64,000 nt of DNA from Macrostomum lignano. Taxonomy: Eukaryota. A model generated the notes under the pieces. That model worked only from the letters and a program-made list of their open reading frames with translations. It made no database searches and had not been told where the DNA came from. This document shows, in pieces, positions 179 through 61,465 of the stretch. A program made the position numbers and the translations under genes. The stretch's first letter is position 1, and every line of letters begins with the position of its first letter. Location: the NCBI GenBank assembly GCA_002269645.1, contig NIVC01001066.1, positions 186,001 to 250,000 on the forward strand, written 5' to 3'.

Positions 179-279
179 AAAATCGGGAAATACAAAATAC
201 GAAATGTTTTAACATACTGTATATGCATCTAGCAGTCAGTGATTATACAGTCATTGACAGAGAAAAGCGCACATGATGC

Positions 280-29151: not shown

Positions 29152-29453
29152 AGAAAGCGGATGTTCTGTACGGCGTAACGGCGAATTTTTATCGCGTGAA
29201 ATATGTGCAGTTGTGCATGGCAATCTGTGTTGCCATGGAGACACTCTGCAGTCCATGGTATAAACAATTTGTTAAATGAATGTGGTTTATTGCTTGTATT
29301 TTAATTTATGAATCTTTCTAGTAAGACTACTTATGAAAATGCACTATCTTAATATTTTAGCTACATAAAAACTCCCACTGAATAAAAAATTTGTTTTAGA
29401 TTTTCAATTTTTTAAATGTAACAACAAATCTAATCTAGCTAGCCATGACTGCC

Positions 29454-30186
29454 ACGCATTTGTTTCCCGATCGATATTCAGATTGATATTCGAAAACTAA
29501 CAAAATCTCTGCTCTGCAAAAATATTTTAGAACGCCGTTTGACAGAAAAAAAAGTGCAACTAAGAACATTGCAAAAATAAAGTTTCAGCTCGATCCGGTA
29601 CTCTGGCTCGAAATGGCACCGATTTTCGATGTGCTCCCATTTAAAATACATGTGATTTTATAAGGCAGATCGATATTCGAGTTCGCTCACTTTGGCTTGA
29701 CAATTCAACATGAAATTTTACACACTAAAAAGTGCAACTAAGAAACCGATAAATATACAGTTTCAGCTCGATCCGTCACTCTGGCTCGAAATGGCACCGA
29801 TTTTCGATGTGCTCCCATTTAAAATACATGTGATTTTATAAGGCAGATCGATATTCGAGTTCGCTCACTTTGGCTTGACCATTCAACATGAAATTTTACA
29901 CACTAAAAAGTGCAAACCAGAAACCGATAAATATACAGTTTCAGCTCGATCCGTCACTCTGGCTCGAAATGGCACCGATTTTCGATGTGCTCCCATTTAA
30001 AATACATGTGATTTTATAAGGCAGATCGATATTCGAGTTCGCTCACTTTGGCTTGACCATTCAACATGAAATTTTACACACTAAAAAGTGCAACTAAGAA
30101 ACCGATAAATATACAGTTTCAGCTCGATCCGTCACTCTGGCTCGAAATGGCACCGATTTTCGATGTGCTCCCATTTAAAATACATG
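29454..30186 (+). repeat. Left TIR: ~130-bp unique tip plus ~3.4 copies of a 178-bp unit
   Basis: Units start at 29583, 29761, 29939 and 30117; the fourth is truncated at 30186. Confidence 0.93.
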
Positions 30187-30920
30187 TTAAAGGATAAATA
30201 AAAGGTGGCTGTGTCTGCATATCTATTGACTGGCGAAACTCAGATTTCCGGTTAATTGAGTGCGCGTTGGGATGTGCTCGAGCAGGGGGAAGTGGATAGG
30301 CTGGGTGGGGGTTACGGAGTGCAAACTGAGTGCCCGAACTGCCTGCCTGCGCATGCTACAGTTACTACATGATTACCGAACACCGTGTCCATTTGCAGGA
30401 TTTAAGTCAAATATTTGTTCCGGTCTTACACGGGTCACATCCTATATACTAAAAATGAGTTGTCTGTATGTGGGTAGGTATGCGATAGATTTCAGAAAAA
30501 ATGGCTCAACCGATTTTCTTCAAACTTGCACCATTCGATCAGAAATTTTCCTGGGACGGTACATGCATCTTGGCTAAAAAATTGCTCAATGATAAAGGGA
30601 TTAAATATTCGAAAAACATGCTTTTTTGCAAAGGTCAAGCAGCTCTTTCGACCTAAAATTCATTGTAAGAATGCTAGAGAAAAAAACTGACTGGCTGAAT
30701 TCTGATTGTCATAAAGATTGCATCACAACAAGTTGAAAACAGTGCCGAAGAAATGCACACACGACTTGATTAAAATTGCGTAACCAATATTGCTAACTTG
30801 AACTGAGACTGATACTGGCTGACTGAGAAATTGATTATGTCATAACTTTTTACCCCAATTGACTTGCTGTAAGAATTTAATTATAAGGGCCACAATTCAT
30901 GTACTCCAATTGAAAAGAGA

Positions 30921-30973
30921 TAGCCTAGATCCGAACAGACTGGACTGCCAACGTAGCGACCTGGGTTCGAATC
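30921..30973 (+). ncRNA. tRNA-like Pol III cassette (A box TAGCCTAG, B box GGTTCGAATC, downstream T-run); related copies at 41863-41915, 47969-48021, 50342-50394
   Basis: Four diverged copies, each just upstream of a minisatellite array; not a complete cloverleaf. Confidence 0.5.
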
Positions 30974-31039
30974 TTAGTAGTGCAAAATAATTTTTTTATA
31001 AAACACCTTGAAAACACGAAACTGCTAAACATAAAAAAG

Positions 31040-32680
31040 CACAATGTCAAACATAAAAGAGGCACCATGTCAAACATTACATGGGCACCATGTAAAACAA
31101 ATACGTGACTCTATGTCAAACATTAAAGAGCCACCATGTGAAACATTAAAGAGTCACCATTTCGAACATTAAAGAGCCACCACGTCGAACATTAAAGTGC
31201 CACCATGTCAAACGTAAAAGAGCCACCATGAAGAACATTAAAGAGCCACCATGCCAAACATAAAAGAGCCACTATGTCGAACATTAAAGAGCTAGCATGT
31301 CAAACATTAAAGAGCCACCATGTCGAACATTAAAGAGCCACCATTTCGAACATAAAAGAGCCGCCATGTAAAACATTAAAGAGCCACATTGTCAAACATA
31401 AAAGAGCCACCATGTAAGACATTTAAGAGCCATCATGTGAAACATTTAAGAGCCACCATGTCGAACATAAAAGAGCTACCATGTCAAACCTAAAAGAGCC
31501 ACCATGTCAAACCTAAAAGAGCCACCATGTCGAACATAAAAGAGCTACCATGTCAAACCTAAAAGAGCCACCATGTCGAACATAAACGAACCTTTATGTC
31601 GTACATTAAAGAGCCACCATGTCAAACATTAAAGAGCCACCATGTCAAACATAAAAGAGCCACAATGTCAAACATAGAAGAGCCACAATGTCAGATATTA
31701 AAAAGCCACCGTATCAAACATAAAAGAGTTACCATGTAGAACAAAAAAGAGCCACCATGTCGAACATAAAAGAGCCACCATGTCAAGCATAAAAGAGCCA
31801 CCATGTCAAACATTAAAGAGCCACCATGTCGAACATTAAAGAGCCACCATGTCAAGCATAAAAGAGCCACCATGTCAAACATTAAAGAGCCATGTCAAAC
31901 ACTAAAGAGCCAACATGTCGAACATAAAAGAGCCACCATGTCAAACATTAAAGAGCCACCATGTCAGACATTAAAGAGCCACCATGTCAAACATTAAAGA
32001 GCCACCATATCGAACACTAAAGAGCCACCATGTCAAACATATGTGACTCCATGTCGAATATATACGTGCCTCCATGTCACACATAAAAGGGCCACCATGT
32101 AAAACATATACATATGACTACATAACAAACATTAAACAGCCCACCATGTCGAACATTAAAGAGCCATCATGTCAAACATAAAAGAGCCACCATGTCAAAC
32201 ATTAAAGAGCCACCATGTCAGACATTAAAGAGCCACTATGTCAAACATAAAAGAGCCACCATGTCAAACATTAAAGAGCCACCATATCGAACACTAAAGA
32301 GCCACCATGTCAAACATATGTGACTCCATGTCAAATATATACGTGACTCCATGTCACACATAAAAGAGCCACCATGTAAAACATATACATATGACTACAT
32401 AACAAACATTAAACAGCCACCATGTCGAACATTAAAGAGCCATCATGTCAAACATAAAAGAGCCACCATGTCATAAATTAAAGACCCACCATGTCAAACA
32501 TTAAAGAGCCACCATGTCAAACATTAAAGAGCCACATGTCGAACATAAAAGAGCCACTTTGTCAAACATCTACGAGTCACCATGTCAAGCGTATACATGA
32601 CTCCATTTCAGACATTAAAGTGCCACCATGTCAAACATAAAAGAGCCACCAGCTCAAACATTAAAGAGTCACCATGTCAG
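31040..32680 (+). repeat. 23-bp minisatellite (CACCATGTCAAACATTAAAGAGC)n inside Helitron A
   Basis: Visible, diverged units. Confidence 0.93.
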
Positions 32681-32689
32681 ACACAAAAC

Positions 32690-33670
32690 AGCTATCTGGA
32701 GATGCGTGCTATCTGGGGGTGCTTGCTATCTGGGGGAATGCTTGCTATCTTGGGGGTTCTAGCTATCTGGGGGTGCTTGCTATTAGGTGGATGCTTGCTA
32801 TCTGGGGTGCCTGCTATCTTGGAGTGCTTGCTATCTGGAGATGCGTGCTATCTGGGGGTGCTTGCTATCTGGGGGTGCTTGCTATCTGGGGGTGCTTGCT
32901 ATCTGGGGGTGCTTGCTATTAGGTGGATGCTTGCTATCTGGGGTGCCTGCTATCTGGGGGTTCTTGCTATCTGGGGGTGCTTGCTATCTGGGGGTGCTTG
33001 CTATTAGGTGGATGCTTGCTATCTGGGGTGCCTGCTATCTGGGGGTGCTTGCTATCTGGAGATGCTTGCTATCTGGGGGTGCTTGCTATTAGGTGGATGC
33101 TTGCTATCTGGGGTGCCTGCTATCTGGGGGTGCTTGCTATCTAGAGATGCTTGCTATCTGGGGGTGCTTGCTATCTGGGGGTGCTTGCTATTAGGTGGAT
33201 GCTTGCTATTAGGTGGATGCTTGCTATCTGGGGGTGCTTGCTATTAGGTGGATGCTTGCTATCTGGGGGTGCTTGCTATCTGGAGATGCTTGCTATCTGG
33301 GGGTGCTTGCTATCTGGGGGTGCTTGCTATCTAAGGGTGCTTGCTATTAGGTGGATGCTTGCTATCTTGGGGTGCTTGCTATTAGGTGGATGCTTGCTAT
33401 CTGGGGTGCCTGCTATCTGGGGGTGCTTGCTATCTAGAGATGCTTGCTACTTGGGGTGCTTGCTATCTGGGGGTGCTTGCTATCTGGGGGTGCTTGCTAT
33501 CTAAGGGTGCTTGCTATTAGGTGGATGCTTGCTATCTGGGGTGCCTGCTATCTGGGGGTGCTTGCTATCTGGAGATGCTTGCTATCTGGGGATGCTTGCT
33601 ATCTAAGGGTGCTTGCTATTAGGTGGATGCTTGCTATCTGGGGGTGCTTGCTATCTGGGGGGTTGCTTGC
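32690..33670 (+). repeat. 17-bp minisatellite (GCTATCTGGGGGTGCTT)n inside Helitron A; remnants at ~47720-47920 and ~58430-58700
   Basis: Visible units. Confidence 0.93.
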
Positions 33671-34281
33671 TGTCCTGGGATATTTTTTTGCATTGCACTT
33701 CATTTGAGCAGTTTTTCTATTGTCTATGTGAAGGCTTTATTTGGCCGTCTTTTTGATACTTGTAGAGTGCCAGAGATTCTATCTAGATGCCCCCCATCGG
33801 GGGGCGAAGATTGCTAGTATTTATCTAATTGTGATTTGCGGTGCCAGCAGAAAAATTCTAATCCTGGACTCACTGAAAAACCGAGCCGCTGCAATTCGTC
33901 AACTGAAGCCCATAGTTCATCGATGGAAGTAGGTAAACCATTTGTGTCGTATAATTGCACCTACGAGCTACGCTCGTACAATGTGCTGATTAACTTTTTG
34001 CCTGTAAATTTAGGTTGCGATTTCAGGGGCCGGTTTTAACCTGCTCTGTAATCGTGTTTAGCCGACGGGGCCGCCCCCCTCCGCCCGTCTGTGCGTGCGG
34101 CCCGCGCGTGTGCATCCCTGCCGCAAGGTGGGGTGCTGGGTGCCGGCCGGCAGGCGGGGGTGTTGGGTTGGGGGTGGGCGGCGTCGGCCCCCTTTTATTT
34201 GTGCGCTCACGCTCTCTCGTGCGCGCTGCGAGAGCGCTTTGGCTCGTAAAATTTTTTTGCGACTATCTGGCTCTGGCTATC

Positions 34282-35298
34282 ATGCATCGTGTGGACCGAC
34301 TAACAGTCAAACAACTCAAGAGTGAGCTGGGTAGCCGAGGCCTCTCAACCGCAGGCAATAAGTCGGCCTTGCAAGCCAGACTGAGACAACACGAGGGGCA
34401 GTCACAGCTTCAAGACGGCGGGACATCGGCATTGACATCGGCATCGGCATCGCCCTGTGCGCAGGAGGAGCTCCAAGACCAAGGCCGGGACCCACGGGAG
34501 GCGGACCTGGACGGCGAGATTCGGCGGGCGCAGAAACGGCTGCAGCTCCTAGAGCTTCAAACACGCGAACGAGAGCTTCGTGAACGCGCCGTCGTGACTG
34601 CTCGTACAGAATCAGGTGAGCAGCAGAATCTTTTCGCTGAACTTATCAACCCAACAGGCCCCGTCAGCGCTAGAGCCAACCCCCGGCCGGTCGGGCAGCC
34701 GTGTCTACTCGTCAGAGACTTTGTCGATGATCTGTCAGGCCAGGCTGACGAGCTGCTCACCAGGGGCAGCTCTGGCGGCCTCGTGCTCAAGAAGTCGACG
34801 ACCAAGCTGGACGGCATGACAATTGGGCAGTGGTTCGCCGGCAGTATGAAGGTCCTGCTTCAGATACTTGAAGACACAGCGCCGCAGCTGACCAGCAAGG
34901 GCCAAGTGTACAGCACAACTGAGCAAGTCAAAGATTACGCCCAGTACAATGTCCAGGTGGCCGAGCTATTCGACAGATTCCCAGCGCACCGGGTGATCAG
35001 ATTCGACCATGACTACCGCCAGCACCGCGCAGCCAACAGCCTTCGCTGGGGCAAAGACTGCGCCCAGATGTCGATCAGGCACCTGCTCAGCATTAAGACG
35101 GACCAGTACAATCAGACAGCCAAGCGAAACCAGCCTAGCAACAAGAGCCGCGTCATGGGTCCGCGGACATCCTCAGGCCGCGAGCTGTGCTTGTCCTTCA
35201 ACAGCACCAACGGCTGCATGAGGAGCAACTGCCGATTCCTCCATGCCTGCCGAATCTGTGAGGGCAGCCACTCCGAGCAAAATCACGCAAAAAACTGA
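34282..35298 (+). CDS. Ngaro ORF1 (gag-like): N-terminal SAP domain, C-terminal Cys/His finger, 338 aa from first ATG
   Basis: LTVKQLKSELGSRGLSTAGNKSALQARL (SAP); CLSFNSTNGCMRSNCRFLHACRICEGSH. Confidence 0.85.
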   Translation: MHRVDRLTVKQLKSELGSRGLSTAGNKSALQARLRQHEGQSQLQDGGTSALTSASASPCAQEELQDQGRDPREADLDGEIRRAQKRLQLLELQTRERELRERAVVTARTESGEQQNLFAELINPTGPVSARANPRPVGQPCLLVRDFVDDLSGQADELLTRGSSGGLVLKKSTTKLDGMTIGQWFAGSMKVLLQILEDTAPQLTSKGQVYSTTEQVKDYAQYNVQVAELFDRFPAHRVIRFDHDYRQHRAANSLRWGKDCAQMSIRHLLSIKTDQYNQTAKRNQPSNKSRVMGPRTSSGRELCLSFNSTNGCMRSNCRFLHACRICEGSHSEQNHAKN

Positions 35299-35321
35299 GC
35301 AAGCGCGCCGACACGGCGCGC
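35289..35321 (+). promoter_or_regulatory. Candidate -1 programmed ribosomal frameshift signal at the gag/pol junction
   Basis: A_AAA_AAC heptamer in the gag frame just before TGA, 7-nt spacer, 8-bp all-GC hairpin GCGCGCCG-ACA-CGGCGCGC; the -1 frame is the pol frame. Confidence 0.75.
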
Positions 35322-35372
35322 GAAACCGATTTTACCCCTCCTGCTTTTAACTGCCTCGCTCAGCCCGCTCCC

Positions 35373-37934
35373 GTGCCCTGCATCGTCAAGCCTCCAGTGC
35401 GGAAGTCCGATCTGACGCAGCCAGTGGGCGATCTCTGCATCGACGCCTGGCGCTCCGAGCTTGTGGGCGACCCCGACGCTGATTTTATTCTCGACGGCAT
35501 CGAGAGCGGCTTCTCCATTGTCGATGACTTCGACTTTACGCCGTGTCTCTGCAGCAACTACCAGTCCGTCAACCGGAATCGCGACCAAGTCCAAGCTGTT
35601 ATCGGTGAAGAAATCCGGCTCGGGAGGTACGTCCCAGTCGTGGACAAGCCTGCGATGGTCTGTCCGCTGGGAGCCATTCCGAAAGACAGCTCCGGCATCC
35701 GGCTAATCCATGATTGCTCCGTCCCTCGCGGCTGCAGCCTGAACGATCACTATGCCCAACAACGGCGTCTCCGCTTCACCTCCGTCGACGAGGCCGTCAG
35801 GATGATGCAGCCCGGCTGGTTTATGGCAAAGGTGGACATCGCGTCAGCCTACCGCAGCGTGCCAATTTCTCCGCAGTGCTACCAAGCCACCGGCATCCAC
35901 TGGGACTTCGGCAATGGCTGCTCAACCTTCCTGGTGGATACGCGGTTACCATTCGGCAGCAGAGCCTCCGTCAGCATTTTCCATCGCCTCACGCAAGCGG
36001 CCCGGCGAATGATGTGTCGCAAGGGGTTCCTGGCAACCGTCGTTTTCATCGATGACTTCCTCGTCATGGCCAGGACGAAAGCCGAGTGTGACAGGGCCTA
36101 CCACGAGCTGCGCAACCTGCTCACCAGGCTTGGCTTCACCATCAACGAGAAAAAGTCGGTGCCGCCGACGACAAAGCTGCGATTCCTCGGCATTGACATC
36201 GACACCGTTCAAGCCAGTCTTTCCTTCCCAGCCGACAAAGCCGAAAAGCTTCAGCTTCTCCTTGACACCTGCCTCTCGCGGAGGAGCCTGTGCAAGGCGG
36301 AACTGCAGAAGCTGCTCGGGCACCTCAGCCACTTGTGCACTGCCGCCCAGCACGGGCGAACTTTCCTGCGGCCGCTGATCGAGCTGGTCAACAGCCTGGC
36401 GCATCCGTCCGACAGGGTCGGCGTCACGGAGGAGCTCCAGTCGCAGCTGAGGTGGTGGATGACCGCGTTGAGCACGCTGCCGCCTAGAGCTGCCTGGCCC
36501 TCGCGTCGGCCGGCTGGAGCGATTGAGTCTGACGCCTGTGACATTGGAGGCGGTGCTGTGCTGCATTTCGTCGACAGAGAACCGGTTTGGCTCTACATCG
36601 ACTGGCAGTCCGACTGTGATGGCGCGTTCAAGGAGCTGCACATCAACCTCAAGGAGTGCGCCGCCCCGCTGGTTGCGATTCTGCAGCACCAAGAAGCCTT
36701 CAGCGGCTGCTCGGTTGCAGTCTACACTGACAGCACCGCCGCCTGCGGCATCATTAACTCGGGTTCCGCCAAGCACCAAGGTATTGCCGACCTGCAGAAG
36801 CGCGTCGCCCTGACCTGCATTCAACGCGACATCATCGTCCGCGCGCACCATGTGCCTGGCCGCTTCCAGCTGCTCGCAGACCCGCTGTCCAGAGCGCATG
36901 ACCCCAGCCAGCTTGCCAACTTTCTGTTTCGCTTCTATGGCACCTGCTATGTGCCAACCAGCTTGCTTGCCTCCGCTTGCTTGAGCTCTGCCGCTGCCTC
37001 CCACCTTCTGTTTCAGGTCCGCCTCCTGTGGTCCCGGGTCCCGGCCTCTCCGCACCGGCACGTCGACTGCTCAGCCAAGGCTTCGCCAGCTCAACTCGCT
37101 CCGCCTACGCCAGCCAGTGCGCGTCCTGGATGCGATTCTGCGCCGCCCACAGACTTCAACCGCTGTCAGCGCAGCCCGCCGACGTGTGCAACTACCTGGC
37201 GGAGCTGGCGAACAACCGGCTGTTCTCAGTCAGCAGCCTATCCTGCCACCTCGCCGCCGTGTCTTGGCTCTACAAATCAAACAGCGTGGCTGACCCGACG
37301 AGGCAGCCACTGGTTCAGCTTGCCCTGCGCGGCGCCCGCCGGCTCCTCGGCGCCGCCCCAAGGAGCAAACGAGCGTTGCGGCCGGCCGACCTGCAGCGGC
37401 TGCACGGCGTGCTGCGACCTGAAGAGCCCAGGGACTGCGCATTCTGGTGCGCCTGCATCGTGGGCTGGTGGGCCATGCTACGGCGAGCCAACCTGTGCGT
37501 ATCCGGCCGGTTCGATCCGCAGCGAGACCTCAGTGCGAGCTGCATCCGGCCGTCAAGGGCGGGCGTCATCCTCGTCATTCCGAGGTCGAAGACCAACCAG
37601 TTCGGGGCGCGCCAGCACCGAGTTTTCTTGCCGCAGCTCCCAGACGGACATCCACTCTGCCCGGTCACCGCGCTCCAGAAGCAGCTGCGCATTAACCGAC
37701 CGCAGGACGCCCAGCATCACTTGTTCAGTACCCGAACCAGACGGTCCACCGCACCGCTCACCGCGCGCACCTTCGCGAGGCGCCTGTCCGCGGCACTTCG
37801 ACAGGCCGGGTTCGCCGAGCCAGCCAGGTTCTCTGGGCACTCGTTGCGTCGAGGTGGCGCTACATCCGCGGCGGAGGCCGGCATCCCCATCGATTCAATC
37901 ATGCGAGTCGGTGACTGGGCAAGCAGCGCTGTAG
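35373..37934 (+). CDS. Ngaro ORF2: reverse transcriptase + RNase H (no ATG start; frame open back through 35289)
   Basis: RLIHDCS, KVDIASAYR, LPFGSRAS, FIDDFL, FLGIDID; RNase H IESDACDIG, VYTDS, ADPLSR. Confidence 0.93.
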   Translation: MPCIVKPPVRKSDLTQPVGDLCIDAWRSELVGDPDADFILDGIESGFSIVDDFDFTPCLCSNYQSVNRNRDQVQAVIGEEIRLGRYVPVVDKPAMVCPLGAIPKDSSGIRLIHDCSVPRGCSLNDHYAQQRRLRFTSVDEAVRMMQPGWFMAKVDIASAYRSVPISPQCYQATGIHWDFGNGCSTFLVDTRLPFGSRASVSIFHRLTQAARRMMCRKGFLATVVFIDDFLVMARTKAECDRAYHELRNLLTRLGFTINEKKSVPPTTKLRFLGIDIDTVQASLSFPADKAEKLQLLLDTCLSRRSLCKAELQKLLGHLSHLCTAAQHGRTFLRPLIELVNSLAHPSDRVGVTEELQSQLRWWMTALSTLPPRAAWPSRRPAGAIESDACDIGGGAVLHFVDREPVWLYIDWQSDCDGAFKELHINLKECAAPLVAILQHQEAFSGCSVAVYTDSTAACGIINSGSAKHQGIADLQKRVALTCIQRDIIVRAHHVPGRFQLLADPLSRAHDPSQLANFLFRFYGTCYVPTSLLASACLSSAAASHLLFQVRLLWSRVPASPHRHVDCSAKASPAQLAPPTPASARPGCDSAPPTDFNRCQRSPPTCATTWRSWRTTGCSQSAAYPATSPPCLGSTNQTAWLTRRGSHWFSLPCAAPAGSSAPPQGANERCGRPTCSGCTACCDLKSPGTAHSGAPASWAGGPCYGEPTCAYPAGSIRSETSVRAASGRQGRASSSSFRGRRPTSSGRASTEFSCRSSQTDIHSARSPRSRSSCALTDRRTPSITCSVPEPDGPPHRSPRAPSRGACPRHFDRPGSPSQPGSLGTRCVEVALHPRRRPASPSIQSCESVTGQAAL

Positions 37935-49417: not shown

Positions 49418-49463
49418 TTAGGGTTAGGGTTAGGGTTAGGGTTAGGGTTAGGGTTAGGGTTAG
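49418..49463 (+). repeat. Interstitial telomeric (TTAGGG)7 inside unit B
   Basis: Seven perfect units plus TTAG. Confidence 0.92.
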
Positions 49464-50451: not shown

Positions 50452-53400
50452 TAGATTACTGCACTCGATAAGCCAAGGATTATTGCTATTAATAAACCAA
50501 GGACTACTGCACTCGATAAACCAAGGACTATTGCTCTTGGCAAACCAAGGATTACTGCACTCAAGAAGCCAAGGATTATTGCACTTGATAAACCAAGGAT
50601 TATTTCACTTGATAAACCAAGGATTATTGCACTTGATAGGCCAAGGATTACTGCACTTGATAAACCAAGGATTATTGCACTTGATAAGCCAAGGATTACT
50701 GCGCTAGATAAACCAAGGATTATTGCACTTGATAAACCAAGGATTATTGCACTTAATAAACCAAGGATTATTGCACTTGATAAACCAAGGATTATTGCAC
50801 TTGATAGGCCAAGGATTACTGCACTTGATAAACCAAGGATTATTGCACTTGATAGGCCAAAGATTACTGCGCTTGATAAGCCATGGATTATTGCACTTGA
50901 TAAACCAAGGATTATTGCACTTGATAAGCCAAGGATTACTGCGCTTGATAAACCAAGGATTATTGCACTTGATAAACCAAGGATTATTGCAGTTGATAAG
51001 CCAAGGATTATTGCACTTGATAAACCAAGGATTATTTCACTTGATAAACCAAGGATTATTGCACTTGATAGGCCAAGGATTACTGCACTTGATAAACCAA
51101 GGATTATTGCACTTGATAAGCCAAGGATTACTGCGCTAGATAAACCAAGGATTATTGCACTTGATAAACCAAGGATTATTGCACTTAATAAACCAAGGAT
51201 TATTGCACTTGATAAACCAAGGATTATTGCACTTGATAGGCCAAGGATTACTGCACTTGATAAACCAAGGATTATTGCACTTGATAGGCCAAGGATTACT
51301 GCACTTGATAAACCAAGGATTATTGCACTTGATAGGCCAAAGATTACTGCGCTTGATAAGCCATGGATTATTGCACTTGATAGTAAAGAATGTTGCACTT
51401 GATAAGCCAAGGATTAATGCACTGGATTATTCAAGGATTATTGCTATTAATAAACCAAGGACTACTGCACTCGATAAGCCAAGGATTATTGCTCTTAATA
51501 AACCAAGGATTACTGCACTTGGAAAACTAAGGATTACTGCACTCGATACACCAAGGATTATTGCTCTTGATAAACCAAGGATTATTGCACTTGATAAGCC
51601 AAGGATTACTGCGCTTGATAAACCAAGGATTATTGCACTTGATAAACCAAGGATTATTGCACTTGATAAACAAAGGATTATTGCACTTGATAAACCAAGG
51701 ATTATTTCACTTGATAAACCAAGGATTATTGCACTTGATAAACAAATATTGCACTTGATAAACCAAGGATTATTGCACTTGATAAACCAAGGATTATTGC
51801 ACTTGATAAGCCAAGGATTACTGCGCTTGATAAACCAAGGATTATTGCACTTGATAAACCAAGGATTATTGCAGTTGATAAGCCAAGGATTATTGCACTT
51901 GATAAACCAAGGATTATTTCACTTGATAAACCAAGGATTATTGCACTTGATAGGCCAAGGATTACTGCACTTGATAAACCAAGGATTATTGCACTTGATA
52001 AGCCAAGGATTACTGCGCTAGATAAACCAAGGATTATTGCACTTGATAAACCAAGGATTATTGCACTTAATAAACCAAGGATTATTGCACTTGATAAACC
52101 AAGGATTATTGCACTTGATAGGCCAAGGATTACTGCACTTGATAAACCAAGGATTATTGCACTTGATAGGCCAAAGATTACTGCGCTTGATAAGCCATGG
52201 ATTATTGCACTTGATAGTAAAGAATGTTGCACTTGATAAGCCAAGGATTAATGCACTGGATTATTCAAGGATTATTGCTATTAATAAACCAAGGACTACT
52301 GCACTCGATAAGCCAAGGATTATTGCTCTTAATAAACCAAGGATTACTGCACTTGGAAAACTAAGGATTACTGCACTCGATACAACAAGGATTATTGCTC
52401 TTGATAAACCAAGGATTATTGCACTTGATAAGCCAAGGATTACTGCGCTTGATAAACCAAGGATTATTGCACTTGATAGGCCAAGGATTACTGCACTTGA
52501 TAAACCAAGGATTATTGCACTTGATAGGCCAAAGATTACTGCGCTTGATAAACCAAGGATTATTGCACTTGATAAGTCAAGGATTACTGCGCTTGATAAA
52601 CCAAGGATTATTGCACTTGATAAACAAAGGATTATTGCACTTGATAAACCAAGGATTATTTCACTTGATAAACCAAGGATTATTGCACTTGATAAACAAA
52701 TATTGCACTTGATAAACCAAGGATTATTGCACTTGATAAACCAAGGATTATTGCACTTGATAAGCCAAGGATTACTGCGCTAGATAAACCAAGGATTATT
52801 GCACTTGATAAACCAAGGATTATTGCAGTTGATAAGCCAAGGATTATTGCACTTGATAAACCAAGGATTATTTCACTTGATAAACCAAGGATTATTGCAC
52901 TTGATAGGCCAAGGATTACTGCACTTGATAAACCAAGGATTATTGCACTTGATAAACCAAGGATTATTGCACTTGATAAGCCAAGGATTACTGCGCTTGA
53001 TAAACCAAGGATTATTGCACTTGATAGGCCAAGGATTACTGCACTTGATAAACCAAGGATTATTGCACTTGATAGGCCAAAGATTACTGCGCTTGATAAA
53101 CCAAGGATTATTGCACTTGATAAGTCAAGGATTACTGCGCTTGATAAACCAAGGATTATTGCACTTGATAAACAAAGGATTATTGCACTTGATAAACCAA
53201 GGATTATTTCACTTGATAAACCAAGGATTATTGCACTTGATAAACAAATATTGCACTTGATAAACCAAGGATTATTGCACTTGATAAGCCAAGGATTACT
53301 GCGCTTGATAAACCAAGGATTATTGCACTTGATAAACCAAGGATTATTGCAGTTGATAAGCCAAGGATTATTGCACTTGATAAACCAAGGATTATTTCAC

Positions 53401-56400
53401 TTGATAAACCAATGATTATTGCACTTGATAGGCCAAGGATTACTGCACTTGATAAACCAAGGATTATTGCACTTGATAAGCCAAGGATTACTGCGCTAGA
53501 TAAACCAAGGATTATTGCACTTGATAAACCAAGGATTATTGCACTTAATAAACCAAGGATTATTGCACTTGATAAACCAAGGATTATTGCACTTGATAGG
53601 CCAAGGATTACTGCACTTGATAAACCAAGGATTATTGCACTTGATAGGCCAAAGATTACTGCGCTTGATAAGCCATGGATTATTGCACTTGATAGTAAAG
53701 AATGTTGCACTTGATAAGCCAAGGATTAATGCACTGGATTATTCAAGGATTATTGCTATTAATAAACCAAGGACTACTGCACTCGATAAGCCAAGGATTA
53801 TTGCTCTTAATAAACCAAGGATTACTGCACTTGGAAAACTAAGGATTACTGCACTCGATACACCAAGGATTATTGCTCTTGATAAACCAAGAATTATTGC
53901 ACTTGATAAACCAAGGATTACTGCGCTTGATAAACCAAGGATTATTGCACTTGATAAACCAAGGATTATTGCAGTTGATAAGCCAAGGATTATTGCACTT
54001 GATAAACCAAGGATTATTTCACTTGATAAACCAAGGATTATTGCACTTGATAAACAAATATTGCACTTGATAAACCAAGGATTATTGCACTTGATAAACC
54101 AAGGATTATTGCACTTGATAAGCCAAGGATTATTGCACTTGATAGGCCAAGGATTACTGCACTTGATAAACCAAGGATTATTGCACTTAATAAGCCAAGG
54201 ATTACTGCGCTAGATAAACCAAGGATTATTGCACTTGATAAACCAAGGATTATTGCACTTGATAAACCAAGGATTATTGCACTTGATAAACCAAGGATTA
54301 TTGCACTTGATAAACAAATATTGCACTTGATAAACCAAGGATTATTGCACTTGATAAACCAAGGATTATTGCACTTGATAAGCCAAGGATTATTGCACTT
54401 GATAGGCCAAGGATTACTGCACTTGATAAACCAAGGATTATTGCACTTGATAAGCCAAGGATTACTGCGCTAGATAAACCAAGGAATATTGCACTTGATA
54501 AACCAAGGATTATTGCACTTGATAAACCAAGGATTATTGCACTTGATAAACCAAGGATTATTGCACTTGATAAGCCAAGGATTACAGCGCTTGATAAGCC
54601 ATGGATTATTGCACTTGATAAGCCAAGGATTAATGCACTGGATTATTCAAGGATTATTGCTATTAATAAACCAAGGACTACTGCACTCGATAAACCAAGG
54701 ATTATTGCTCTTAATAAACCAAGGATTACTGCACTTGGAAAACTAAGGATTACTGCACATGATAAACCAAGGATTATTGCTCTTGGCAAACCAAGGATTA
54801 CTGCACTCGATAAGCCAAGGATTATTGCACTTGATAAACCAAGGATTATTGCACTTGATAAACCAAGGATTATTGCACTTTATAAGCCAAAGATTACTGC
54901 ACTTGATAAACCAAGGATTATTGCACTTGATAAACCAAGGATTATTGCACTTGATTAATCAAGGATTATTGCTATTAATAAACCAAGGATTATTGCACTT
55001 GATAAACCAAGGATTATTGCACTTGATAAGCCAAGGATTACTGCGCTAGATAAACCAAGGATTATTGCACTTGATAAACCAAGGATTATTGCAGTTGATA
55101 AGCCAAGGATTATTGCACTTGATAAACCAAGGATTATTTCACTTGATAAACCAAGGATTATTGCACTTGATAGGCCAAGGATTACTGCACTTGATAAACC
55201 AAGGATTATTGCACTTGATAAACCAAGGATTATTGCACTTGATAAGCCAAGGATTACTGCGCTTGATAAACCAAGGATTATTGCACTTGATAGGCCAAGG
55301 ATTACTGCACTTGATAAACCAAGGATTATTGCACTTGATAGGCCAAAGATTACTGCGCTTGATAAACCAAGGATTATTGCACTTGATAAGTCAAGGATTA
55401 CTGCGCTTGATAAACCAAGGATTATTGCACTTGATAAACAAAGGATTATTGCACTTGATAAACCAAGGATTATTTCACTTGATAAACCAAGGATTATTGC
55501 ACTTGATAAACAAATATTGCACTTGATAAACCAAGGATTATTGCACTTGATAAGCCAAGGATTACTGCGCTTGATAAACCAAGGATTATTGCACTTGATA
55601 AACCAAGGATTATTGCAGTTGATAAGCCAAGGATTATTGCACTTGATAAACCAAGGATTATTTCACTTGATAAACCAATGATTATTGCACTTGATAGGCC
55701 AAGGATTACTGCACTTGATAAACCAAGGATTATTGCACTTGATAAGCCAAGGATTACTGCGCTAGATAAACCAAGGATTATTGCACTTGATAAACCAAGG
55801 ATTATTGCACTTAATAAACCAAGGATTATTGCACTTGATAAACCAAGGATTATTGCACTTGATAGGCCAAGGATTACTGCACTTGATAAACCAAGGATTA
55901 TTGCACTTGATAGGCCAAAGATTACTGCGCTTGATAAGCCATGGATTATTGCACTTGATAGTAAAGAATGTTGCACTTGATAAGCCAAGGATTAATGCAC
56001 TGGATTATTCAAGGATTATTGCTATTAATAAACCAAGGACTACTGCACTCGATAAGCCAAGGATTATTGCTCTTAATAAACCAAGGATTACTGCACTTGG
56101 AAAACTAAGGATTACTGCACTCGATACACCAAGGATTATTGCTCTTGATAAACCAAGAATTATTGCACTTGATAAACCAAGGATTACTGCGCTTGATAAA
56201 CCAAGGATTATTGCACTTGATAAACCAAGGATTATTGCAGTTGATAAGCCAAGGATTATTGCACTTGATAAACCAAGGATTATTTCACTTGATAAACCAA
56301 GGATTATTGCACTTGATAAACAAATATTGCACTTGATAAACCAAGGATTATTGCACTTGATAAACCAAGGATTATTGCACTTGATAAGCCAAGGATTATT

Positions 56401-57690
56401 GCACTTGATAGGCCAAGGATTACTGCACTTGATAAACCAAGGATTATTGCACTTAATAAGCCAAGGATTACTGCGCTAGATAAACCAAGGATTATTGCAC
56501 TTGATAAACCAAGGATTATTGCACTTGATAAACCAAGGATTATTGCACTTGATAAACCAAGGATTATTGCACTTGATAAACAAATATTGCACTTGATAAA
56601 CCAAGGATTATTGCACTTGATAAACCAAGGATTATTGCACTTGATAAGCCAAGGATTATTGCACTTGATAGGCCAAGGATTACTGCACTTGATAAACCAA
56701 GGATTATTGCACTTGATAAGCCAAGGATTACTGCGCTAGATAAACCAAGGAATATTGCACTTGATAAACCAAGGATTATTGCACTTGATAAACCAAGGAT
56801 TATTGCACTTGATAAACCAAGGATTATTGCACTTGATAAGCCAAGGATTACAGCGCTTGATAAGCCATGGATTATTGCACTTGATAAGCCAAGGATTAAT
56901 GCACTGGATTATTCAAGGATTATTGCTATTAATAAACCAAGGACTACTGCACTCGATAAACCAAGGATTATTGCTCTTAATAAACCAAGGATTACTGCAC
57001 TTGGAAAACTAAGGATTACTGCACATGATAAACCAAGGATTATTGCTCTTGGCAAACCAAGGATTACTGCACTCGATAAGCCAAGGATTATTGCACTTGA
57101 TAGGCCAAGGATTACTGCGCTTGATAAACCAAGGATTATTGCACTTGATAAACCAAGGATTATTGCAGTTGATAAGCCAAGGATTATTGCACTTGATAAA
57201 CCAAGGATTATTTCACTTGATAAACCAAGGATTATTGCACTTGATAAACAAATATTGCACTTGATAAACCAAGGATTATTGCACTTGATAAGCCAAGGAT
57301 TACTGCGCTAGATAAACCAAGGATTATTGCACTTGATAAACCAAGGATTATTGCACTTAATAAACCAAGGATTATTGCACTTGATAAACCAAGGATTATT
57401 GCACTTAATAAACCAAGGATTATTGCACTTGATAAACAAAGGATTATTGCACTTGATAAACAAAGGATTATTGCACTTGATAAACCAAGGATTATTGCAC
57501 TTGATAAACCAAGGATTATTGCACTTTATAAGCCAAAGATTACTGCACTTGATAAACCAAGGATTATTGCACTTGATAAACCAAGGATTATTGCACTTGA
57601 TTAATCAAGGATTATTGCTATTAATAAACCAAGGATTATTGCACTAGCTGAGAAGCTGATTACTGCGCTGTCTAAAAAAGGGATTATTGC
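50452..57690 (+). repeat. 24-bp satellite variant (ATAAACCAAGGATTATTGCACTTG) with a 2,266-bp duplication
   Basis: Identical ORFs recur at +2266 (53228/55494, 53515/55781, 54489/56755). Confidence 0.95.
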
Positions 57691-57700
57691 ACTCGCTGAG

Positions 57701-58349
57701 TGCGCTGACCTGCTGGCCAAGGCTGGCTCCGCCGGCGCGCTATTGGGGCCGGGCCCGGGTGCCCCCATCCCCGCCTCGGTGATCAATTCCCGCGTTAAGC
57801 GCTGGACTGACTCCGAGCATCTCCGCAGGTGGCACGACACCCGGAATTGTAGGCAATCCCGTGCTGCCGTCCCCTGTCCCTCTCCTCTCCTGCGTAGAGC
57901 CCTCCTCAGGCTCAACCGCAGAGACCTCAGAGCAGTTAGCATGGCCCTCTCCGGGCATGGCTGCTTCTCTCGCCACCGCTTCCTTCAGGGCCAGGTACCC
58001 GAGGAGCGGTGCCCCTTCTGCCGCTCAGGCAGTGAAAACGCCGAGCATTTTATCTGCCACTGCCCGGTTTTCACCAGGGCCAGGCTTACTCACCTCGGGC
58101 CAAACCCGGTTCTCTCCGACGTTTGCAGGCCCGAGAGCATCCCGCTGCTCGCCCGGTACCTCAGGGACACCGGACGAGCTGATTTCTTCCCCACCGTCGG
58201 TGAGGAGGACCGCGCTGCAGGCGAGACCGACGGGTCCCCCTGAGCAACACCACTTCAACGGAAGTCGTTGGTCGCCAGGGGCTAGCGGAATGGGCGGTCT
58301 CCTCCGCCTCCTCGCTGCATCCGCCGGACGCCCCCTGCAGCTAAGTCAA
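57701..58349 (+). mobile_element. 5'-truncated RNase H-bearing non-LTR retrotransposon (I/R1 group)
   Basis: ADLLAKAGS (RNase H end), LSGHG, CPFC...ENAEHFICHCP knuckle; 12-bp TSD GCACTCGCTGAG at 57689-57700 and 58350-58361. Confidence 0.85.
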
Positions 58350-60388
58350 GCACTCGCTGAGACGTGGATTGTTGCACAACCTGAGAAAGCGAATATTGCA
58401 TTAGCGGAAGTAACATTTGCACTAGCTACTTGCTGTCTCGTGGATGCTTGCTCTCGAGGGGGGATACTTGCTATTTGGGAGAGGGGGTGCTGGCTGCATG
58501 CATGGGATTCTTTCAATCCAGGGATGCTTGCTATTTAGGGATTCTTGCTATCTGCAGGATGCTTGCTATCTGGGTGGATGCTTCTATAATATCTGGGGGG
58601 TGCTTGCTATCTGTGGTGATTCTTGCTATGAGCATTAGAGGATGCTTGCTATCTGCGATTGTTCACTTTTGGAGGGGGTTGCTTGCTGTCTTGGGAATAT
58701 TTTCTATTTAGGGAAACGATATTTTGTTGACTGTTTGTTAATTTTAGAGAAAAAGTGATTTTTTAATTTTGCAAACATCTTAGTCCGTGACAAGTTTACA
58801 CGAATAAGGTGATTTTTAAAATGTGAAGAAGGATTTAGTGTTTAAGAAAATGTGTTTTTTTATTGTTTTCCATGAACTATTTTTGCTCCTTTCTTATTGG
58901 GCGCCCCGAAGGGGGGCCGCACTAGATTGCTAGTCCATATACTAAAAATCCGGTACTTAAAATATTCCGCTAAACTACATTTCATACTCCTGCAGACAAC
59001 TCCTCGATTCGAATGTCGTCGCTCCATTCGTGGACCAAACAGCACCTGTGTTCAGAAGCAGCCCGGTGACTTTTGAGCCAGATACTTTGCCACGGACCAT
59101 GCAGAATGACGGCTATAGCTGCGGTGTGTTCGTCTGTCTGTATGCCACGGCTGTTGCAACTGGATCACCGCTACACTTCAGAAACGACACAGGATCCCTA
59201 AAAAAGTATAGGTGTCACATCTGGCAGGTTTTCCAGAATTACAGTCAAGGAGGAAGCCAGGCGACCTGCAGCACGTGCAACAGGATGGTACCTGATGCTT
59301 GTGCTAGAAATCGGACGATTGACTGGGTGGGTAGCAGCTAGTACGCTTGCTATATTGACTACACTTTAAAGGCTTTACGAGCGTACAATAGTTATGCTGC
59401 TCTCTTCGTTGAAGTTGTTCTTTCCGGAAATAGGCTAATCTACGAGTATTAACGATATATCGCCGATAAGTAGCTAGTACTAAAACCATTTCACTTGTAG
59501 GTAGCCAACAGTGGCAATAAAAGCTAAAAAGGAAGTATATATAAATTAACCATTACTGATATGCTAAATAAAATTAGGGCAATCCCATTTAACACTGAAA
59601 TTAAATTCCTTACTACAGATCGAATGCCCATCCTGCCTGAATTGGTACCACGACAAATGCGTGGCCAGTGGCCCGACCGACACCTTTATCTGTTCGAGCT
59701 GCCAAAACCTTTTTTCGATCTGAACGAACGAAGCAACTGCAAAATACGTAGTGAATTTAAGCAGTGCTTTTTTAATTTTACGAGTACATCTAGACTGTTT
59801 CTTAAAGCATACTAGGTAATCGCGATCGTATATTAGGAATTACGAATCGTGCATCTCATCGTTCCTGCAATCGCACAGTTTTTATTGTTATAATTTTCCT
59901 TTACAAACTCTCATACTCCATCAGCCAGGTGCGGATCCAGGAATTTCTTGAGTGGGGCCTAATGCAATGCTAGATCACCGAGGGCCTTGGGGCCGGATTG
60001 GAAGGGCCGGATCTGGCCCTGGGGCCGAGGGCTGTTGACCCCCTGCTACAGTATAAGTCTTAAATTAAAAGTAAGTTAATCCTCATATAGCTTCTGAACA
60101 TTGCAAGGCGAGGCAATAAATAGAATGTACTGCTTGCTTAGTATTGCTTAGGAAAGGCCATTTTTCGGGAAGCAGAGTATTAATTGCAACCCCTAATTAG
60201 ATCCGCAACCTGCCTTCTGTGAGCTATATACGAGAGCTATAGAATTTCGCGTTCCTCGTTGTCTATACTTTTCTGAATGCACCAACATCCGAACAATTAA
60301 TTTAACAATAAACGAGTCCCAAACAACGTTGTTGCCTTCGTGTGTAAAATTTATGAGAAAGAAATAACGTTTCCTATCAAAATAGAAC

Positions 60389-61190
60389 AAAATTTCATGT
60401 TGAATGGTCAAGCCAAAGTGAGCGAACTCGAATATCGATCTGCCTTATAAAATCACATGTATTTTAAATGAGAGCACATCGAAAATCGGTGCCATTTCGA
60501 GCCAGAGTGACGGATCGAGCTGAAACTGTATATTTATCGGTTTCTTAGTTGCACTTTTTAGTGTGTAAAATTTCATGTTGAATGGTCAAGCCAAAGTGAG
60601 CGAACTCGAATATCGACATCTGCCTTATAAAATCACATGTATTTTAAATGAGAGCACATCGAAAATCGGTGCCATTTCGAGCCAGAGTGACGGATCGAGC
60701 TGAAACTGTATATTTATCGGTTTCTGGTTTGCACTTTTTAGTGTGTAAAATTTCATGTTGAATGGTCAAGCCAAAGTGAGCGAACTCGAATATCGATCTG
60801 CCTTATAAAATCACATGTATTTTAAATGAGAGCACATCGAAAATCGGTGCCATTTCGAGCCAGAGTGACGGATCGAGCTGAAACTGTATATTTATCGGTT
60901 TCTTAGTTGCACTTTTTAGTGTGTAAAATTTCATGTTGAATCGTCAAGCCAAAGTGAGCGAACTCGAATATCGATCTGCCTTATAAAATCACATGTATTT
61001 TAAATGGGAGCACATCGAAAATCGGTGCCATTTCGAGCCAGAGTAACGGATCGAGCTGAAACTTTATTTTTGCAATGTTCTTAGTTGCACTTTTTTTTCT
61101 GTCAAACGGCGTTTTAAAATATTTTTGCAGAGCAGAGATTTTGTTAGTTTTCGAATATCAATCTGAATATCGATCGGGAAACAAATGCGT
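60389..61190 (-). repeat. Right TIR: tip plus ~4 copies of the 178-bp unit, inverted
   Basis: Mirror of the left TIR, including the unit-specific variant AAGTGCAAACCAG; a few mismatches. Confidence 0.93.
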
Positions 61191-61465
61191 ATGACTGCCA
61201 GCGTATTTAGTTTAAAAGCGGTAAGAATTCCATTTCCATCCCGTATCACATTAGTATTTATATAGGTAGAGCAATTTATGCTATTTCTCCATTTTCAGTC
61301 ATCAACCGTCCTCGTAAGTAAGTTATATTTCAAAGGAGCAACGCAAACTGCTTCGTTCCGAACATCTTCCAACAAGTATTAAAGCAAAAATATCTAGGAT
61401 TCTAGCTGCTACCAATAGAATAATACTCGCCTGTGCTCTACCACAAAAATAAAAGCGAAATCAAA

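What the first reader, a model, noticed from the sequence alone, without database searches (positions are those of the whole stretch)
29445..61199. Half the window is one 31.7-kb Mutator/Foldback-like transposon with tandem-repeat TIRs and a perfect 9-bp TSD
Seen: the 178-bp arrays at 29.5 kb and 60.4-61.2 kb are mirror images ending in the same tip, and both ends are flanked by ATGACTGCC. Established: 9-bp TSDs and long TIRs built of tandem subrepeats are typical of Mutator/Foldback elements. Inference: subtracting nested insertions leaves a ~3.5-kb non-autonomous core (29454-30439, 33818-34011, 38511-38550, 58934-61190). The left TIR is truncated where the cargo gene also loses its 5' end, consistent with one deletion that removed the transposase. 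If other loci carry the inflated form, this family moves retroelements, Helitrons and satellites as one package.
Basis: partly seen in the sequence, partly recalled or inferred. Interest (0 to 1): 0.85.

Follow-up and report, generated by a model that had tools for sequence, protein, structure and literature searches.

The report
Nested-insertion-bloated foldback DNA transposon in flatworm
Half of this window is one dead, about 3.5-kb cut-and-paste transposon with long repeat-built inverted ends and a 9-bp target duplication, swollen to 31.7 kb by three later insertions of other mobile elements; this is ordinary for a repeat-rich animal genome.

Summary
Inverted arms 29454-30187 and 61190-60389 are 99.2% identical. 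Each arm is a 95-bp tip plus 178-bp tandem units. ATGACTGCC flanks both ends directly and occurs nowhere else in the window.

Removing a Helitron-like insert (30440-33817) restores a Ulp1-protease exon. A Macrostomum lignano protein (99% identical) joins across 33929-58995, so the DIRS-like retroelement (34012-38510) and a 20.4-kb head-to-tail array of four Helitron-like units (38551-58933) lie in an intron. The core is about 3.5 kb and non-autonomous; it keeps only the last 195 codons of a Ulp1+PHD gene.

The "Mutator" label rests on the 9-bp duplication alone. The closest relatives of the Ulp1-PHD fragment lie in teleost Ginger1 transposons. Two of those three also have inverted ends built of 176- and 183-bp tandem units, but they have TGT...ACA termini and CCGG duplications, which this element lacks. 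The best fit is the MULE superfamily, specifically Rehavkus or foldback type. No transposase and no second copy could be found.

The "moves as one package" idea has no support. Verdict: a new member of a known kind, of modest interest.

The parts
29445..29453 (.). Left copy of the target-site duplication ATGACTGCC (10 bp if the following A is counted)
29454..30187 (+). Left terminal inverted repeat: unique tip 29454-29548, then 3.6 tandem units of 178 bp (29549-30187) ending mid-unit
30188..30398 (+). 211 bp of non-coding DNA between the truncated left array and the first surviving exon; candidate deletion junction or intron remnant, ending in a cag acceptor
30399..30439 (+). First half of the Ulp1 exon (DLSQIFVPVLHGSH, catalytic His region), cut by Helitron A1
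30440..33817 (+). Nested non-autonomous Helitron-like element A1: 5' TCCTATATACTAAAAATG, 23-bp and 17-bp internal arrays, 3' GC hairpin plus CTAG, inserted between A and T
33818..33928 (+). Second half of the Ulp1 exon (IYLIVICGASRKILILDSLKN...HRWK, Asp region), followed by a gt donor
33929..58995 (+). Intron of the Ulp1-PHD gene, about 190 bp originally, now 25,067 bp because of two nested insertions
34012..38510 (+). Nested DIRS-order retroelement (PAT/Ngaro-like). It has a SAP-containing gag, RT, RNase H and a tyrosine recombinase. Its split direct repeats are A1 34012-34258 = A2 38103-38348, and B1 38025-38102 = B2 38433-38510. The repeats are identical apart from one indel.
38551..58933 (+). 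Nested head-to-tail array of four Helitron-like units: B1 38551-40099, B2 40100-41319, A2 41320-49806, A3 49807-58933. The units carry TTAGGG tracts, 24-bp satellite arrays (41989-47690 and 50454-57645), 17- and 23-bp arrays and a LINE-like fragment (about 57650-58500). The array ends in a GC hairpin plus CTAG.
58996..59326 (+). Exon with the Ulp1 catalytic Gln/Cys (QNDGYSCGVFVC) and the first half of the PHD-like finger
59619..59723 (+). Last exon: second half of the PHD-like finger (IECPSCLNWYHDKC...CSSCQ) and the stop codon
59724..60388 (+). Unique 3' internal region between the gene and the right array; it has no counterpart on the left side
60389..61190 (-). Right terminal inverted repeat: 4.0 units of 178 bp (60389-61095), then the tip (61096-61190)
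61191..61199 (.). Right copy of the target-site duplication ATGACTGCC

Best explanation
The interval 29454-61190 is a single non-autonomous cut-and-paste DNA transposon of foldback architecture in a Macrostomum (flatworm) genome. It most likely belongs to the MULE superfamily (Mutator/Rehavkus type).

Shown. It has two TIRs of 734 and 802 bp, each a 95-bp tip plus 178-bp tandem units, flanked by a perfect 9-bp target-site duplication. Its own content is about 3.5 kb and encodes only the 3' 195 codons of a Ulp1-protease + PHD-finger gene, with no transposase. The other 28.3 kb is three nested insertions: a Helitron-like element in the Ulp1 exon, a DIRS-like retroelement in the intron, and a 20.4-kb concatemer of four satellite-bearing Helitron-like units in the same intron.

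Inferred. A transposase supplied in trans made a 9-bp staggered cut at ATGACTGCC and bound repeated sites in the TIRs. The candidate site is the 13-mer GATYGATATTCRA, present once per 178-bp unit and once in each tip. An internal deletion running from inside the left array into the gene removed the transposase-coding 5' part. The three nested elements arrived after the element landed here, so the 31.7-kb form is a locus-specific fossil rather than a mobile unit.
For: TIRs and TSD. The TSD is in direct orientation while the arms are inverted, so it is not part of the arms. The motif GATYGATATTCRA occurs 8 times, all inside the two TIRs, against 0 expected.

Nested-insert model. Joining 30399-30439 to 33818-33928 gives an open exon, and the 195-aa reconstruction scores Pfam Peptidase_C48 at E=5e-11 over profile positions 84-192 of 217. 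The un-joined 138-aa version gave no C48 hit. The UniRef M. lignano protein P0001 is 99% identical and reads ...HRWK|QLLD..., which is exactly the donor at 33928/33929 joined to the acceptor at 58995/58996. Helitron hallmarks. DIRS domains and split repeats.

Superfamily. MULE TSDs are 8-11 bp and MULE TIRs are often hundreds of bp long. Rehavkus has a 9-bp TSD, TIRs of up to 400 bp, a PHD finger and subterminal tandem repeats (PMC6446971 Table 1; bioRxiv 10.1101/2024.12.02.626372). Tm1 combines foldback TIRs, a 9-bp TSD and a Phantom-type MULE transposase (PMC3169594). A MULE transposase with a C-terminal Ulp1+PHD exists (P0023, Branchiostoma), and Ulp1 is reported in hydra and lancelet Mutator transposases (PMC2836005).
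Against: The window contains no transposase of any kind (tblastn). No second copy of this TIR could be retrieved, so TIR-transposase linkage is untested. The best-scoring relatives of the Ulp1-PHD fragment are C-termini of teleost Ginger1 transposases (P0002, E=1.5e-12), not MULE ones (P0023, E=1.9e-6). Foldback TIRs with tandem units of about 180 bp also occur in those Ginger1 elements and next to an unclassified transposase, so the architecture is not diagnostic; the literature says the same (Galileo carries a P transposase, PMC3169594). The units of the Helitron concatemer differ by 5.6-14% while the TIR arms differ by 0.8% and the TSD is intact. This means the concatemer was not built by duplication in place, which leaves open either a pre-formed insert or carriage by the element.
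Confidence: 0.65

Rival explanations
1. The structure is the same, a single non-autonomous TIR transposon bloated by nested inserts, but its transposase belongs to a superfamily other than MULE. Candidates are the unclassified transposase family fused to Ulp1-PHD (P0006 type), Merlin (8-9-bp TSD, from my own knowledge), or an undescribed group.
For: Foldback TIRs evolve independently in several superfamilies (PMC3169594). The Ulp1-PHD module is fused to at least three different N-terminal enzymes among relatives: a Ginger1 integrase, a MULE transposase, and the unknown P0006/14/15 family, whose gene is also followed by a 175-bp array. No MULE domain is linked to this TIR.
Against: A 9-bp (or 10-bp) duplication is the modal MULE/Rehavkus size (PMC6446971). 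hAT (8 bp, own knowledge), P (Galileo, 7 bp, own knowledge) and Ginger1 (4 bp, CCGG; PMC2836005) do not fit. The termini are not TGT...ACA.
Confidence: 0.22
2. The whole 31.7-kb composite is the mobile unit. Under this reading the Helitron array, and perhaps the other inserts, were already inside the element when it transposed to this site.
For: The TSD is perfect and the arms are 99.2% identical, while the head-to-tail Helitron units have diverged by 5.6-14% from each other, so part of the cargo is older than the arms look. From my own knowledge, pairs of Drosophila foldback elements can move very large intervening segments.
Against: TIR identity is not a clock, because the arms can be homogenised. 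A pre-formed Helitron concatemer inserted in one step explains the same numbers (rolling-circle concatemers, PMC8268682). The DIRS split repeats are identical, which points to a very recent insert. One Helitron disrupts an exon. No second locus was found.
Confidence: 0.08
3. The Ulp1-PHD fragment is not the remnant of this element's own transposase gene. It would be a captured piece (Pack-MULE-like) of a Ginger1-type transposon or of a host gene.
For: Its nearest relatives are Ginger1 C-termini. It begins mid-domain at an intron acceptor just inside the left TIR. MULEs are known to capture gene fragments (PMC6446971; PMC3169594).
Against: The identities are all low and close to one another: 36% to Ginger1-linked, 41% to P0006-type and 30-39% to MULE-linked proteins. 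The gene sits in the position and orientation expected for a 3' end reading toward the right TIR, as in the fish elements and in L009. No integrase remnant is present in the window.
Confidence: 0.2
4. This is not a transposon at all, but an inverted segmental duplication or an assembly artefact that happens to place two satellite arrays in mirror orientation.
For: The window does contain a genuine non-transposon palindrome, the HSP70/5S locus at 1-9988.
Against: The arms end at exactly symmetric tips abutted by an identical direct 9-mer that is unique in the window. A gene split by the inserts reassembles across them.
Confidence: 0.02

Closest known systems
Rehavkus (MULE superfamily; Repbase families in Tribolium, Helobdella and others)
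   Same: [quoted passage not shown]
   Different: No Rehavkus DDE domain is present or could be compared. A Ulp1 domain is not mentioned for Rehavkus in the papers read. The reported hosts are arthropods and annelids, not flatworms. Here the TIRs are 734 and 802 bp, against a reported range of 26-400 bp.
Foldback/Phantom-type MULEs such as Tm1 of Meloidogyne and Drosophila FB
   Same: They have composite TIRs of variable length built from tandem motifs, 9-bp TSDs, and mostly non-autonomous copies (PMC3169594).
   Different: Tm1 repeats are motifs of about 14 bp, not 178-bp units. Its transposase has FLYWCH and MULE domains and no Ulp1-PHD. The termini share no sequence with this element.
Mutator transposases with a C-terminal Ulp1 (and PHD): hydra and lancelet MuDR, plant KI-MULEs, and P0023 of Branchiostoma
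   Same: The C-terminal Ulp1 then PHD order is the same. P0023 aligns over residues 5-191 of the 195-aa reconstruction (PMC2836005).
   Different: Identity is only about 30%. The MULE part cannot be compared because it is absent here.
Teleost Ginger1 transposons carrying Ulp1-PHD (loci L006 Labeo rohita, L007, L008 Gadus morhua)
   Same: They hold the best sequence matches to the Ulp1-PHD fragment. The gene reads toward the right TIR. Two of the three have kilobase TIRs containing tandem units of about 180 bp: 183 bp in cod (10.4 and 8.0 copies) and 176 bp in L007. The TIRs of the third, L006, are 579 bp without subrepeats.
   Different: They encode a Gypsy-type integrase (H2C2 + rve), end in TGT...ACA and are flanked by 4-bp CCGG (PMC2836005). 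The window element has ACGCATTTG termini, a 9-bp TSD and no integrase remnant.
Galileo (foldback element of the P superfamily in Drosophila)
   Same: It has long foldback TIRs with internal tandem repeats. It shows that this architecture is convergent (PMC3169594).
   Different: It has a 7-bp TSD (own knowledge) and a P-type transposase.

Membership tests
MULE superfamily (Mutator + Rehavkus) | Target-site duplication of 8-11 bp, commonly 9 | tested here: met
   Perfect 9-bp ATGACTGCC at both ends (10 bp if the shared A is counted). The criterion is from PMC6446971.
MULE superfamily (Mutator + Rehavkus) | Long TIRs (tens to hundreds of bp) | tested here: met
   TIRs of 734 and 802 bp, 99.2% identical.
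MULE superfamily (Mutator + Rehavkus) | DDE transposase with a MULE-type catalytic domain, or TIRs shared with an element that encodes one | not testable with these tools
   No transposase is in the element or the window. The host genome could not be searched: the look-up of encoding contigs failed, and the tip 20-mer gave only chance hits in the metagenome and prokaryote collections.
Rehavkus | Subterminal tandem repeats in or next to the TIRs | tested here: met
   178-bp units, 3.6 and 4.0 copies.
Rehavkus | PHD finger in the encoded protein | tested here: inconclusive
   A Cys/His pattern at the C-terminus gives Pfam PHD E=0.008, 16.6 bits, below the 24-bit cut-off. Homologous positions in relatives pass the cut-off. 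Whether the protein was the transposase is unknown.
Foldback-like structural class | Long composite TIRs made of a unique tip plus tandem subrepeats | tested here: met
   This is a structural class, not a phylogenetic one (PMC3169594).
Ginger1 | TGTNR...YNACA termini | tested here: not met
   The termini are ACGCATTTG.../...CAAATGCGT. The fish relatives do have TGT...ACA termini.
Ginger1 | 4-bp TSD, CCGG or CCGT | tested here: not met
   The TSD here is 9 bp, ATGACTGCC. The criterion is from PMC2836005.
Ginger1 | Gypsy-like integrase (H2C2 + rve + GPY/F) | tested here: not met
   tblastn of P0034, P0010 and P0084 against the window hits only the Ulp1-PHD exons.
hAT | 8-bp TSD and short TIRs | tested here: not met
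   No 8-bp reading gives symmetric termini. The TIRs are longer than 700 bp. The criterion comes from my own knowledge.
Helitron (nested units A1, A2, A3) | 5'-TC, 3'-CTRR, a GC-rich hairpin just upstream of the 3' end, and insertion between A and T without a TSD | tested here: met
   All three A units begin with TC and end in a palindrome followed by (ATT)GCTAG. A1 lies between A30439 and T33818. There is no Rep/helicase ORF, so they are non-autonomous. The B units share the 5' end but lack a CTAG 3' end.
DIRS order, PAT/Ngaro-like (nested) | RT/RNase H plus a tyrosine recombinase instead of an integrase, and split direct repeats A1...B1A2...B2 | tested here: met
   Pfam RVT_1 3e-16, RT_RNaseH 6.5e-4, Phage_integrase 8e-9. 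Repeats 34012-34258 = 38103-38348 and 38025-38102 = 38433-38510.

The most novel reading that the evidence does not exclude
A C-terminal Ulp1-PHD module plus subterminal arrays of nucleosome-length units (175-183 bp) may travel together as a portable 'end/chromatin' cassette that has been exchanged among unrelated transposase superfamilies. The combination was seen with Ginger1 in cod and a second teleost, with an unclassified transposase in a metagenomic eukaryote, and with a 9-bp-TSD element in Macrostomum. That is four of the five loci examined (the exception is L006). One could imagine the PHD finger reading nucleosomes phased on the arrays. The arrays share no sequence, the sample is tiny, and satellites of about 170-180 bp are common anyway (PMC8268682), so coincidence remains the likelier explanation.
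Probability: 0.1. Interest if true: 0.6.

Novelty: new member of a known kind. Interest (0 to 1): 0.3.

Why it matters
For annotation, 31.7 kb of apparent complexity reduces to five ordinary events: one DNA-transposon insertion, one internal deletion and three nested insertions. It also gives a clean, datable example of nesting in a poorly annotated flatworm genome.

For classification, it is a caution. Neither foldback TIRs nor a Ulp1-PHD gene identifies a Mutator element, since both occur in Ginger1 transposons of fish. Only the TSD length and a linked transposase can decide the superfamily.

If an autonomous partner with a MULE or Rehavkus transposase exists, this would extend Ulp1-PHD-bearing foldback MULEs to Platyhelminthes. 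It could also be of practical use as a transposon tool in a transgenesis model.

Tried and rejected
1. Other copies or an empty site. The look-up of encoding contigs with P0001, two versions of the Ulp1 ORF, the DIRS recombinase and P0023 found nothing. The tip 20-mer in metagenome and GTDB contigs gave 5 hits that extend no further than 20-24 nt, so they are chance matches.

2. Transposase in the window. tblastn with all 97 Ulp1-PHD relatives hit only 58.5-59.7 kb.

3. Identity of the N-terminal region of the P0006/P0014/P0015 family. Pfam found nothing even at E<=5. A PDB profile search hit only Ulp1/SENP and PHD. hhalign against the MULE protein P0023 aligned only the C-terminus. The AlphaFold2 model had pLDDT 43, too poor for a fold search. 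A second large homology search returned only three unnamed metagenome proteins. By eye the region has hAT-like motifs, but this is unconfirmed and I did not use it.

4. I first took the 3.1-kb inverted repeat at the window start for a second foldback element. I rejected that: it is a divergent HSP70 gene pair with 5S rRNA genes.

5. Ginger1 membership of the window element was considered after the fish loci were found, and rejected on termini and TSD.

6. Sequence similarity between the 178-bp unit and the fish or metagenome arrays: none.

7. tRNA-like stretches in the Helitron units: ARAGORN and Rfam found nothing there.

8. The LINE identity of 57650-58500 rests only on a CCHC-like ORF end that I recognised by eye. 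Pfam gave no hit.

Full report
OBSERVATION. The two 178-bp arrays are real and are mirror images. TRF reports 29549-30187 (3.6 copies) and 60389-61095 (4.0 copies), each 96% internally matched. The inverted-repeat finder gives arms 29454-30026 and 60618-61190, 573 nt without gaps at 99%. With one 2-bp indel the match runs 29454-30187 against 61190-60455 (98.9% over 736 columns; 728 matches, 6 mismatches, 2 gap columns). Each arm starts with a unique tip of about 95 bp (ACGCATTTGTTTCCCGATCG...). In-register identity between the arms (99%) is higher than off-register identity (94-96%). ATGACTGCC abuts both tips in direct orientation, and those are its only occurrences in the window. The chance of that at two fixed positions is about 4e-6. 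Because it is direct while the arms are inverted, it cannot be part of the arms. The next base is A on both sides, so the repeat is formally 10 bp. Nine bp gives symmetric termini.

HOST. A 195-aa reconstruction of the element's only gene found one close relative among 5.8 billion proteins, a 152-aa 'ULP_PROTEASE domain-containing protein' of Macrostomum lignano at 99% identity. The window is therefore from that flatworm or a very close relative. This fits the TTAGGG tracts seen.

ANATOMY OF THE INTERIOR. Three nested insertions account for 28.3 of the 31.7 kb.

(i) 30440-33817 is a non-autonomous Helitron-like element. It starts 5'-TCCTATATACTAAAAATG, has 23-bp and 17-bp internal arrays and a GC palindrome followed by CTAG, and lies between A30439 and T33818. 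Removing it fuses 30399-30439 to 33818-33928 into one open exon, DLSQIFVPVLHGSHIYLIVICGASRKILILDSLKN...HRWK. Only then does the protein score Pfam Peptidase_C48 (E=5e-11, 43 bits). The un-joined version gave no hit.

(ii) 34012-38510 is a DIRS-order retroelement with a SAP-containing gag, RT, RNase H and a tyrosine recombinase. It has split direct repeats of the PAT/Ngaro kind, and these are identical apart from one indel, so it is a young insert.

(iii) 38551-58933 is a head-to-tail array of four Helitron-like units: B1 38551-40099, B2 40100-41319, A2 41320-49806 and A3 49807-58933. The units carry TTAGGG tracts, two 24-bp satellite arrays of 5.7 and 7.2 kb, 17- and 23-bp arrays and a LINE-like fragment.

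The M. lignano protein reads ...HRWK|QLLDSNVV..., which is exactly the gt donor at 33929 joined to the ag acceptor ending at 58995. Inserts (ii) and (iii) therefore sit in an intron that was originally about 190 bp.

WHAT THE ELEMENT ENCODES. It encodes only the last 195 codons of a Ulp1 + PHD gene: exons 30399-30439+33818-33928, 58996-59326 and 59619-59723. The gene reads toward the right TIR. The C48 match covers profile positions 84-192 of 217, so the gene is cut at its 5' end. The left array stops mid-unit, 66 nt short of the right one, and is followed by 211 bp of non-coding DNA. The 665 bp inside the right array has no counterpart on the left. A single internal deletion is a reasonable reading of this, but it is not proven. 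No transposase is present anywhere in the window.

WHICH SUPERFAMILY. An exhaustive HMMER search gave 97 distant relatives (at most 41% identity) of the Ulp1-PHD fragment.

One relative, from Branchiostoma (P0023), is a full MULE transposase (ZSWIM3_N, FAR1, MULE) with a C-terminal Ulp1 and PHD. This matches published Mutator transposases of hydra and lancelet (PMC2836005).

The best-scoring relatives (P0002 of Labeo rohita, P0004 of Gadus morhua, and the P0034 family) could be placed in their genomes. All three loci are Ginger1 transposons. The gene has Integrase_H2C2 and rve exons upstream of Ulp1-PHD. The termini are TGT...ACA and the flanks are CCGG, exactly as Ginger1 is defined (PMC2836005). 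The cod element and L007 have kilobase TIRs containing tandem units: 183 bp in cod (10.4 and 8.0 copies) and 176 bp in L007. The Labeo element (L006) has perfect 579-bp TIRs without subrepeats.

A third group (P0006/14/15, from eukaryotic metagenome contigs) fuses Ulp1-PHD to an N-terminal region of about 900 aa that I could not classify. Its gene is again followed by a 175-bp array.

So neither the cargo nor the foldback architecture is diagnostic. The literature says the same for foldback ends (Galileo is P-type, FARE and Tm1 are MULE-type; PMC3169594).

What remains is the duplication length. Nine bp is the modal MULE size (range 8-11 bp). It is also the size for Rehavkus, the MULE-superfamily group described as foldback transposons with long TIRs, subterminal tandem repeats and a PHD finger (PMC6446971; bioRxiv 10.1101/2024.12.02.626372). 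Ginger1 is excluded on termini, TSD and absence of an integrase. hAT is excluded on TSD and TIR length. I therefore place the element in the MULE superfamily, Rehavkus/foldback type, at roughly two chances in three.

MECHANISM. Shown: TIRs, TSD, lack of autonomy and nested structure. Inferred: mobilisation in trans by a DDE transposase that makes 9-bp staggered cuts. The 13-mer GATYGATATTCRA occurs 8 times, only in the TIRs (once per intact unit and once in each tip; 0 expected). It is the obvious candidate binding site. More subterminal repeats are reported to strengthen transposase binding in foldback elements (Liu and Wessler 2017, as cited in the Tribolium preprint).

THE 'PACKAGE' IDEA. 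There is no positive evidence for it. One observation keeps it alive. The concatemer units differ by 5.6% (A2/A3) to 14% (B1/B2), while the arms differ by 0.8% and the TSD is intact. The concatemer was therefore not built by duplication in place. A pre-formed rolling-circle concatemer inserted in one step explains this equally well (PMC8268682), and TIR identity is not a clock. I give the idea under 10%.

VERDICT. This is a new member of a known kind, in a genome whose repeats are little described. Interest is 0.3.

Noticed in passing
window 1-9988: A palindromic locus with arms 187-3335 and 8150-4996, 99.5% identical. Each arm carries an intronless HSP70 gene (280-2190 on the minus strand, 6141-8057 on the plus strand) and a 5S rRNA gene (2860-2978 minus, 5353-5471 plus). 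Mirrored 14-bp and 22-bp arrays accompany them. It is a divergent heat-shock gene pair, not a transposon.
   Followed up: partly
L008 4473-17176 (Gadus morhua), L007 7341-16439, L006 5851-12798 (Labeo rohita): Teleost Ginger1 transposons (H2C2 + rve + Ulp1 + PHD, TGT...ACA termini, CCGG flanks) with TIRs of 0.58 to more than 2 kb. The cod element's TIRs contain 8-10 copies of a 183-bp unit. This is far beyond the 40-270-bp TIRs given when Ginger1 was defined.
   Followed up: partly
L009 1293-5066 and 6103-6594; proteins P0006, P0014, P0015, P0102: A eukaryotic metagenome family of 900-1257-aa proteins. An unclassifiable N-terminal region of about 900 aa (hAT-like motifs by eye only) is fused to Ulp1 + PHD, and the gene is followed by a 175-bp tandem array that runs off the contig.
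   Followed up: partly
window 38551-58949: Four Helitron-like units are joined head to tail. After the final CTAG comes a 16-nt copy of the A-type 5' end (TCCATATACTAAAAAT, 58934-58949), as if a fifth unit had been started. The left junction is not at an A.
   Followed up: partly
window 39450-39479, 41107-41130, 49418-49463: Interstitial telomere-type tracts, (CTAACC)5 and (TTAGGG)7.7, lie inside the Helitron-like units.
   Followed up: no
window 41989-47690 and 50454-57645: Arrays of a 24-bp satellite, 5.7 kb and 7.2 kb long, lie inside Helitron units A2 and A3. The first array has a 48-bp higher-order period. This is another case of Helitron-borne satellite DNA.
   Followed up: no
window 57650-58655; also 32691-33671 and 47712-47922: In unit A3, a GC-rich fragment whose ORF ends in a CCHC-like motif (LINE-like by eye, no Pfam hit) is followed by a 17-bp array. 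The same 17-bp repeat occurs without that fragment in units A1 and A2.
   Followed up: no
window 34015-35298: The gag-like ORF of the DIRS-like element carries a SAP DNA-binding domain (Pfam E=2e-12).
   Followed up: no
window 23649-26087: An 812-codon open frame is extremely rich in Arg and Lys and has no Pfam or PDB match. It may be a frame artefact of a low-complexity, A-rich region.
   Followed up: partly
window 10694-11547, 12095-12884, 18607-19721: Further minisatellite arrays with 30-bp, 20/80-bp, 16-bp and 57-bp periods lie outside the element. The window as a whole is unusually rich in tandem repeats.
   Followed up: no
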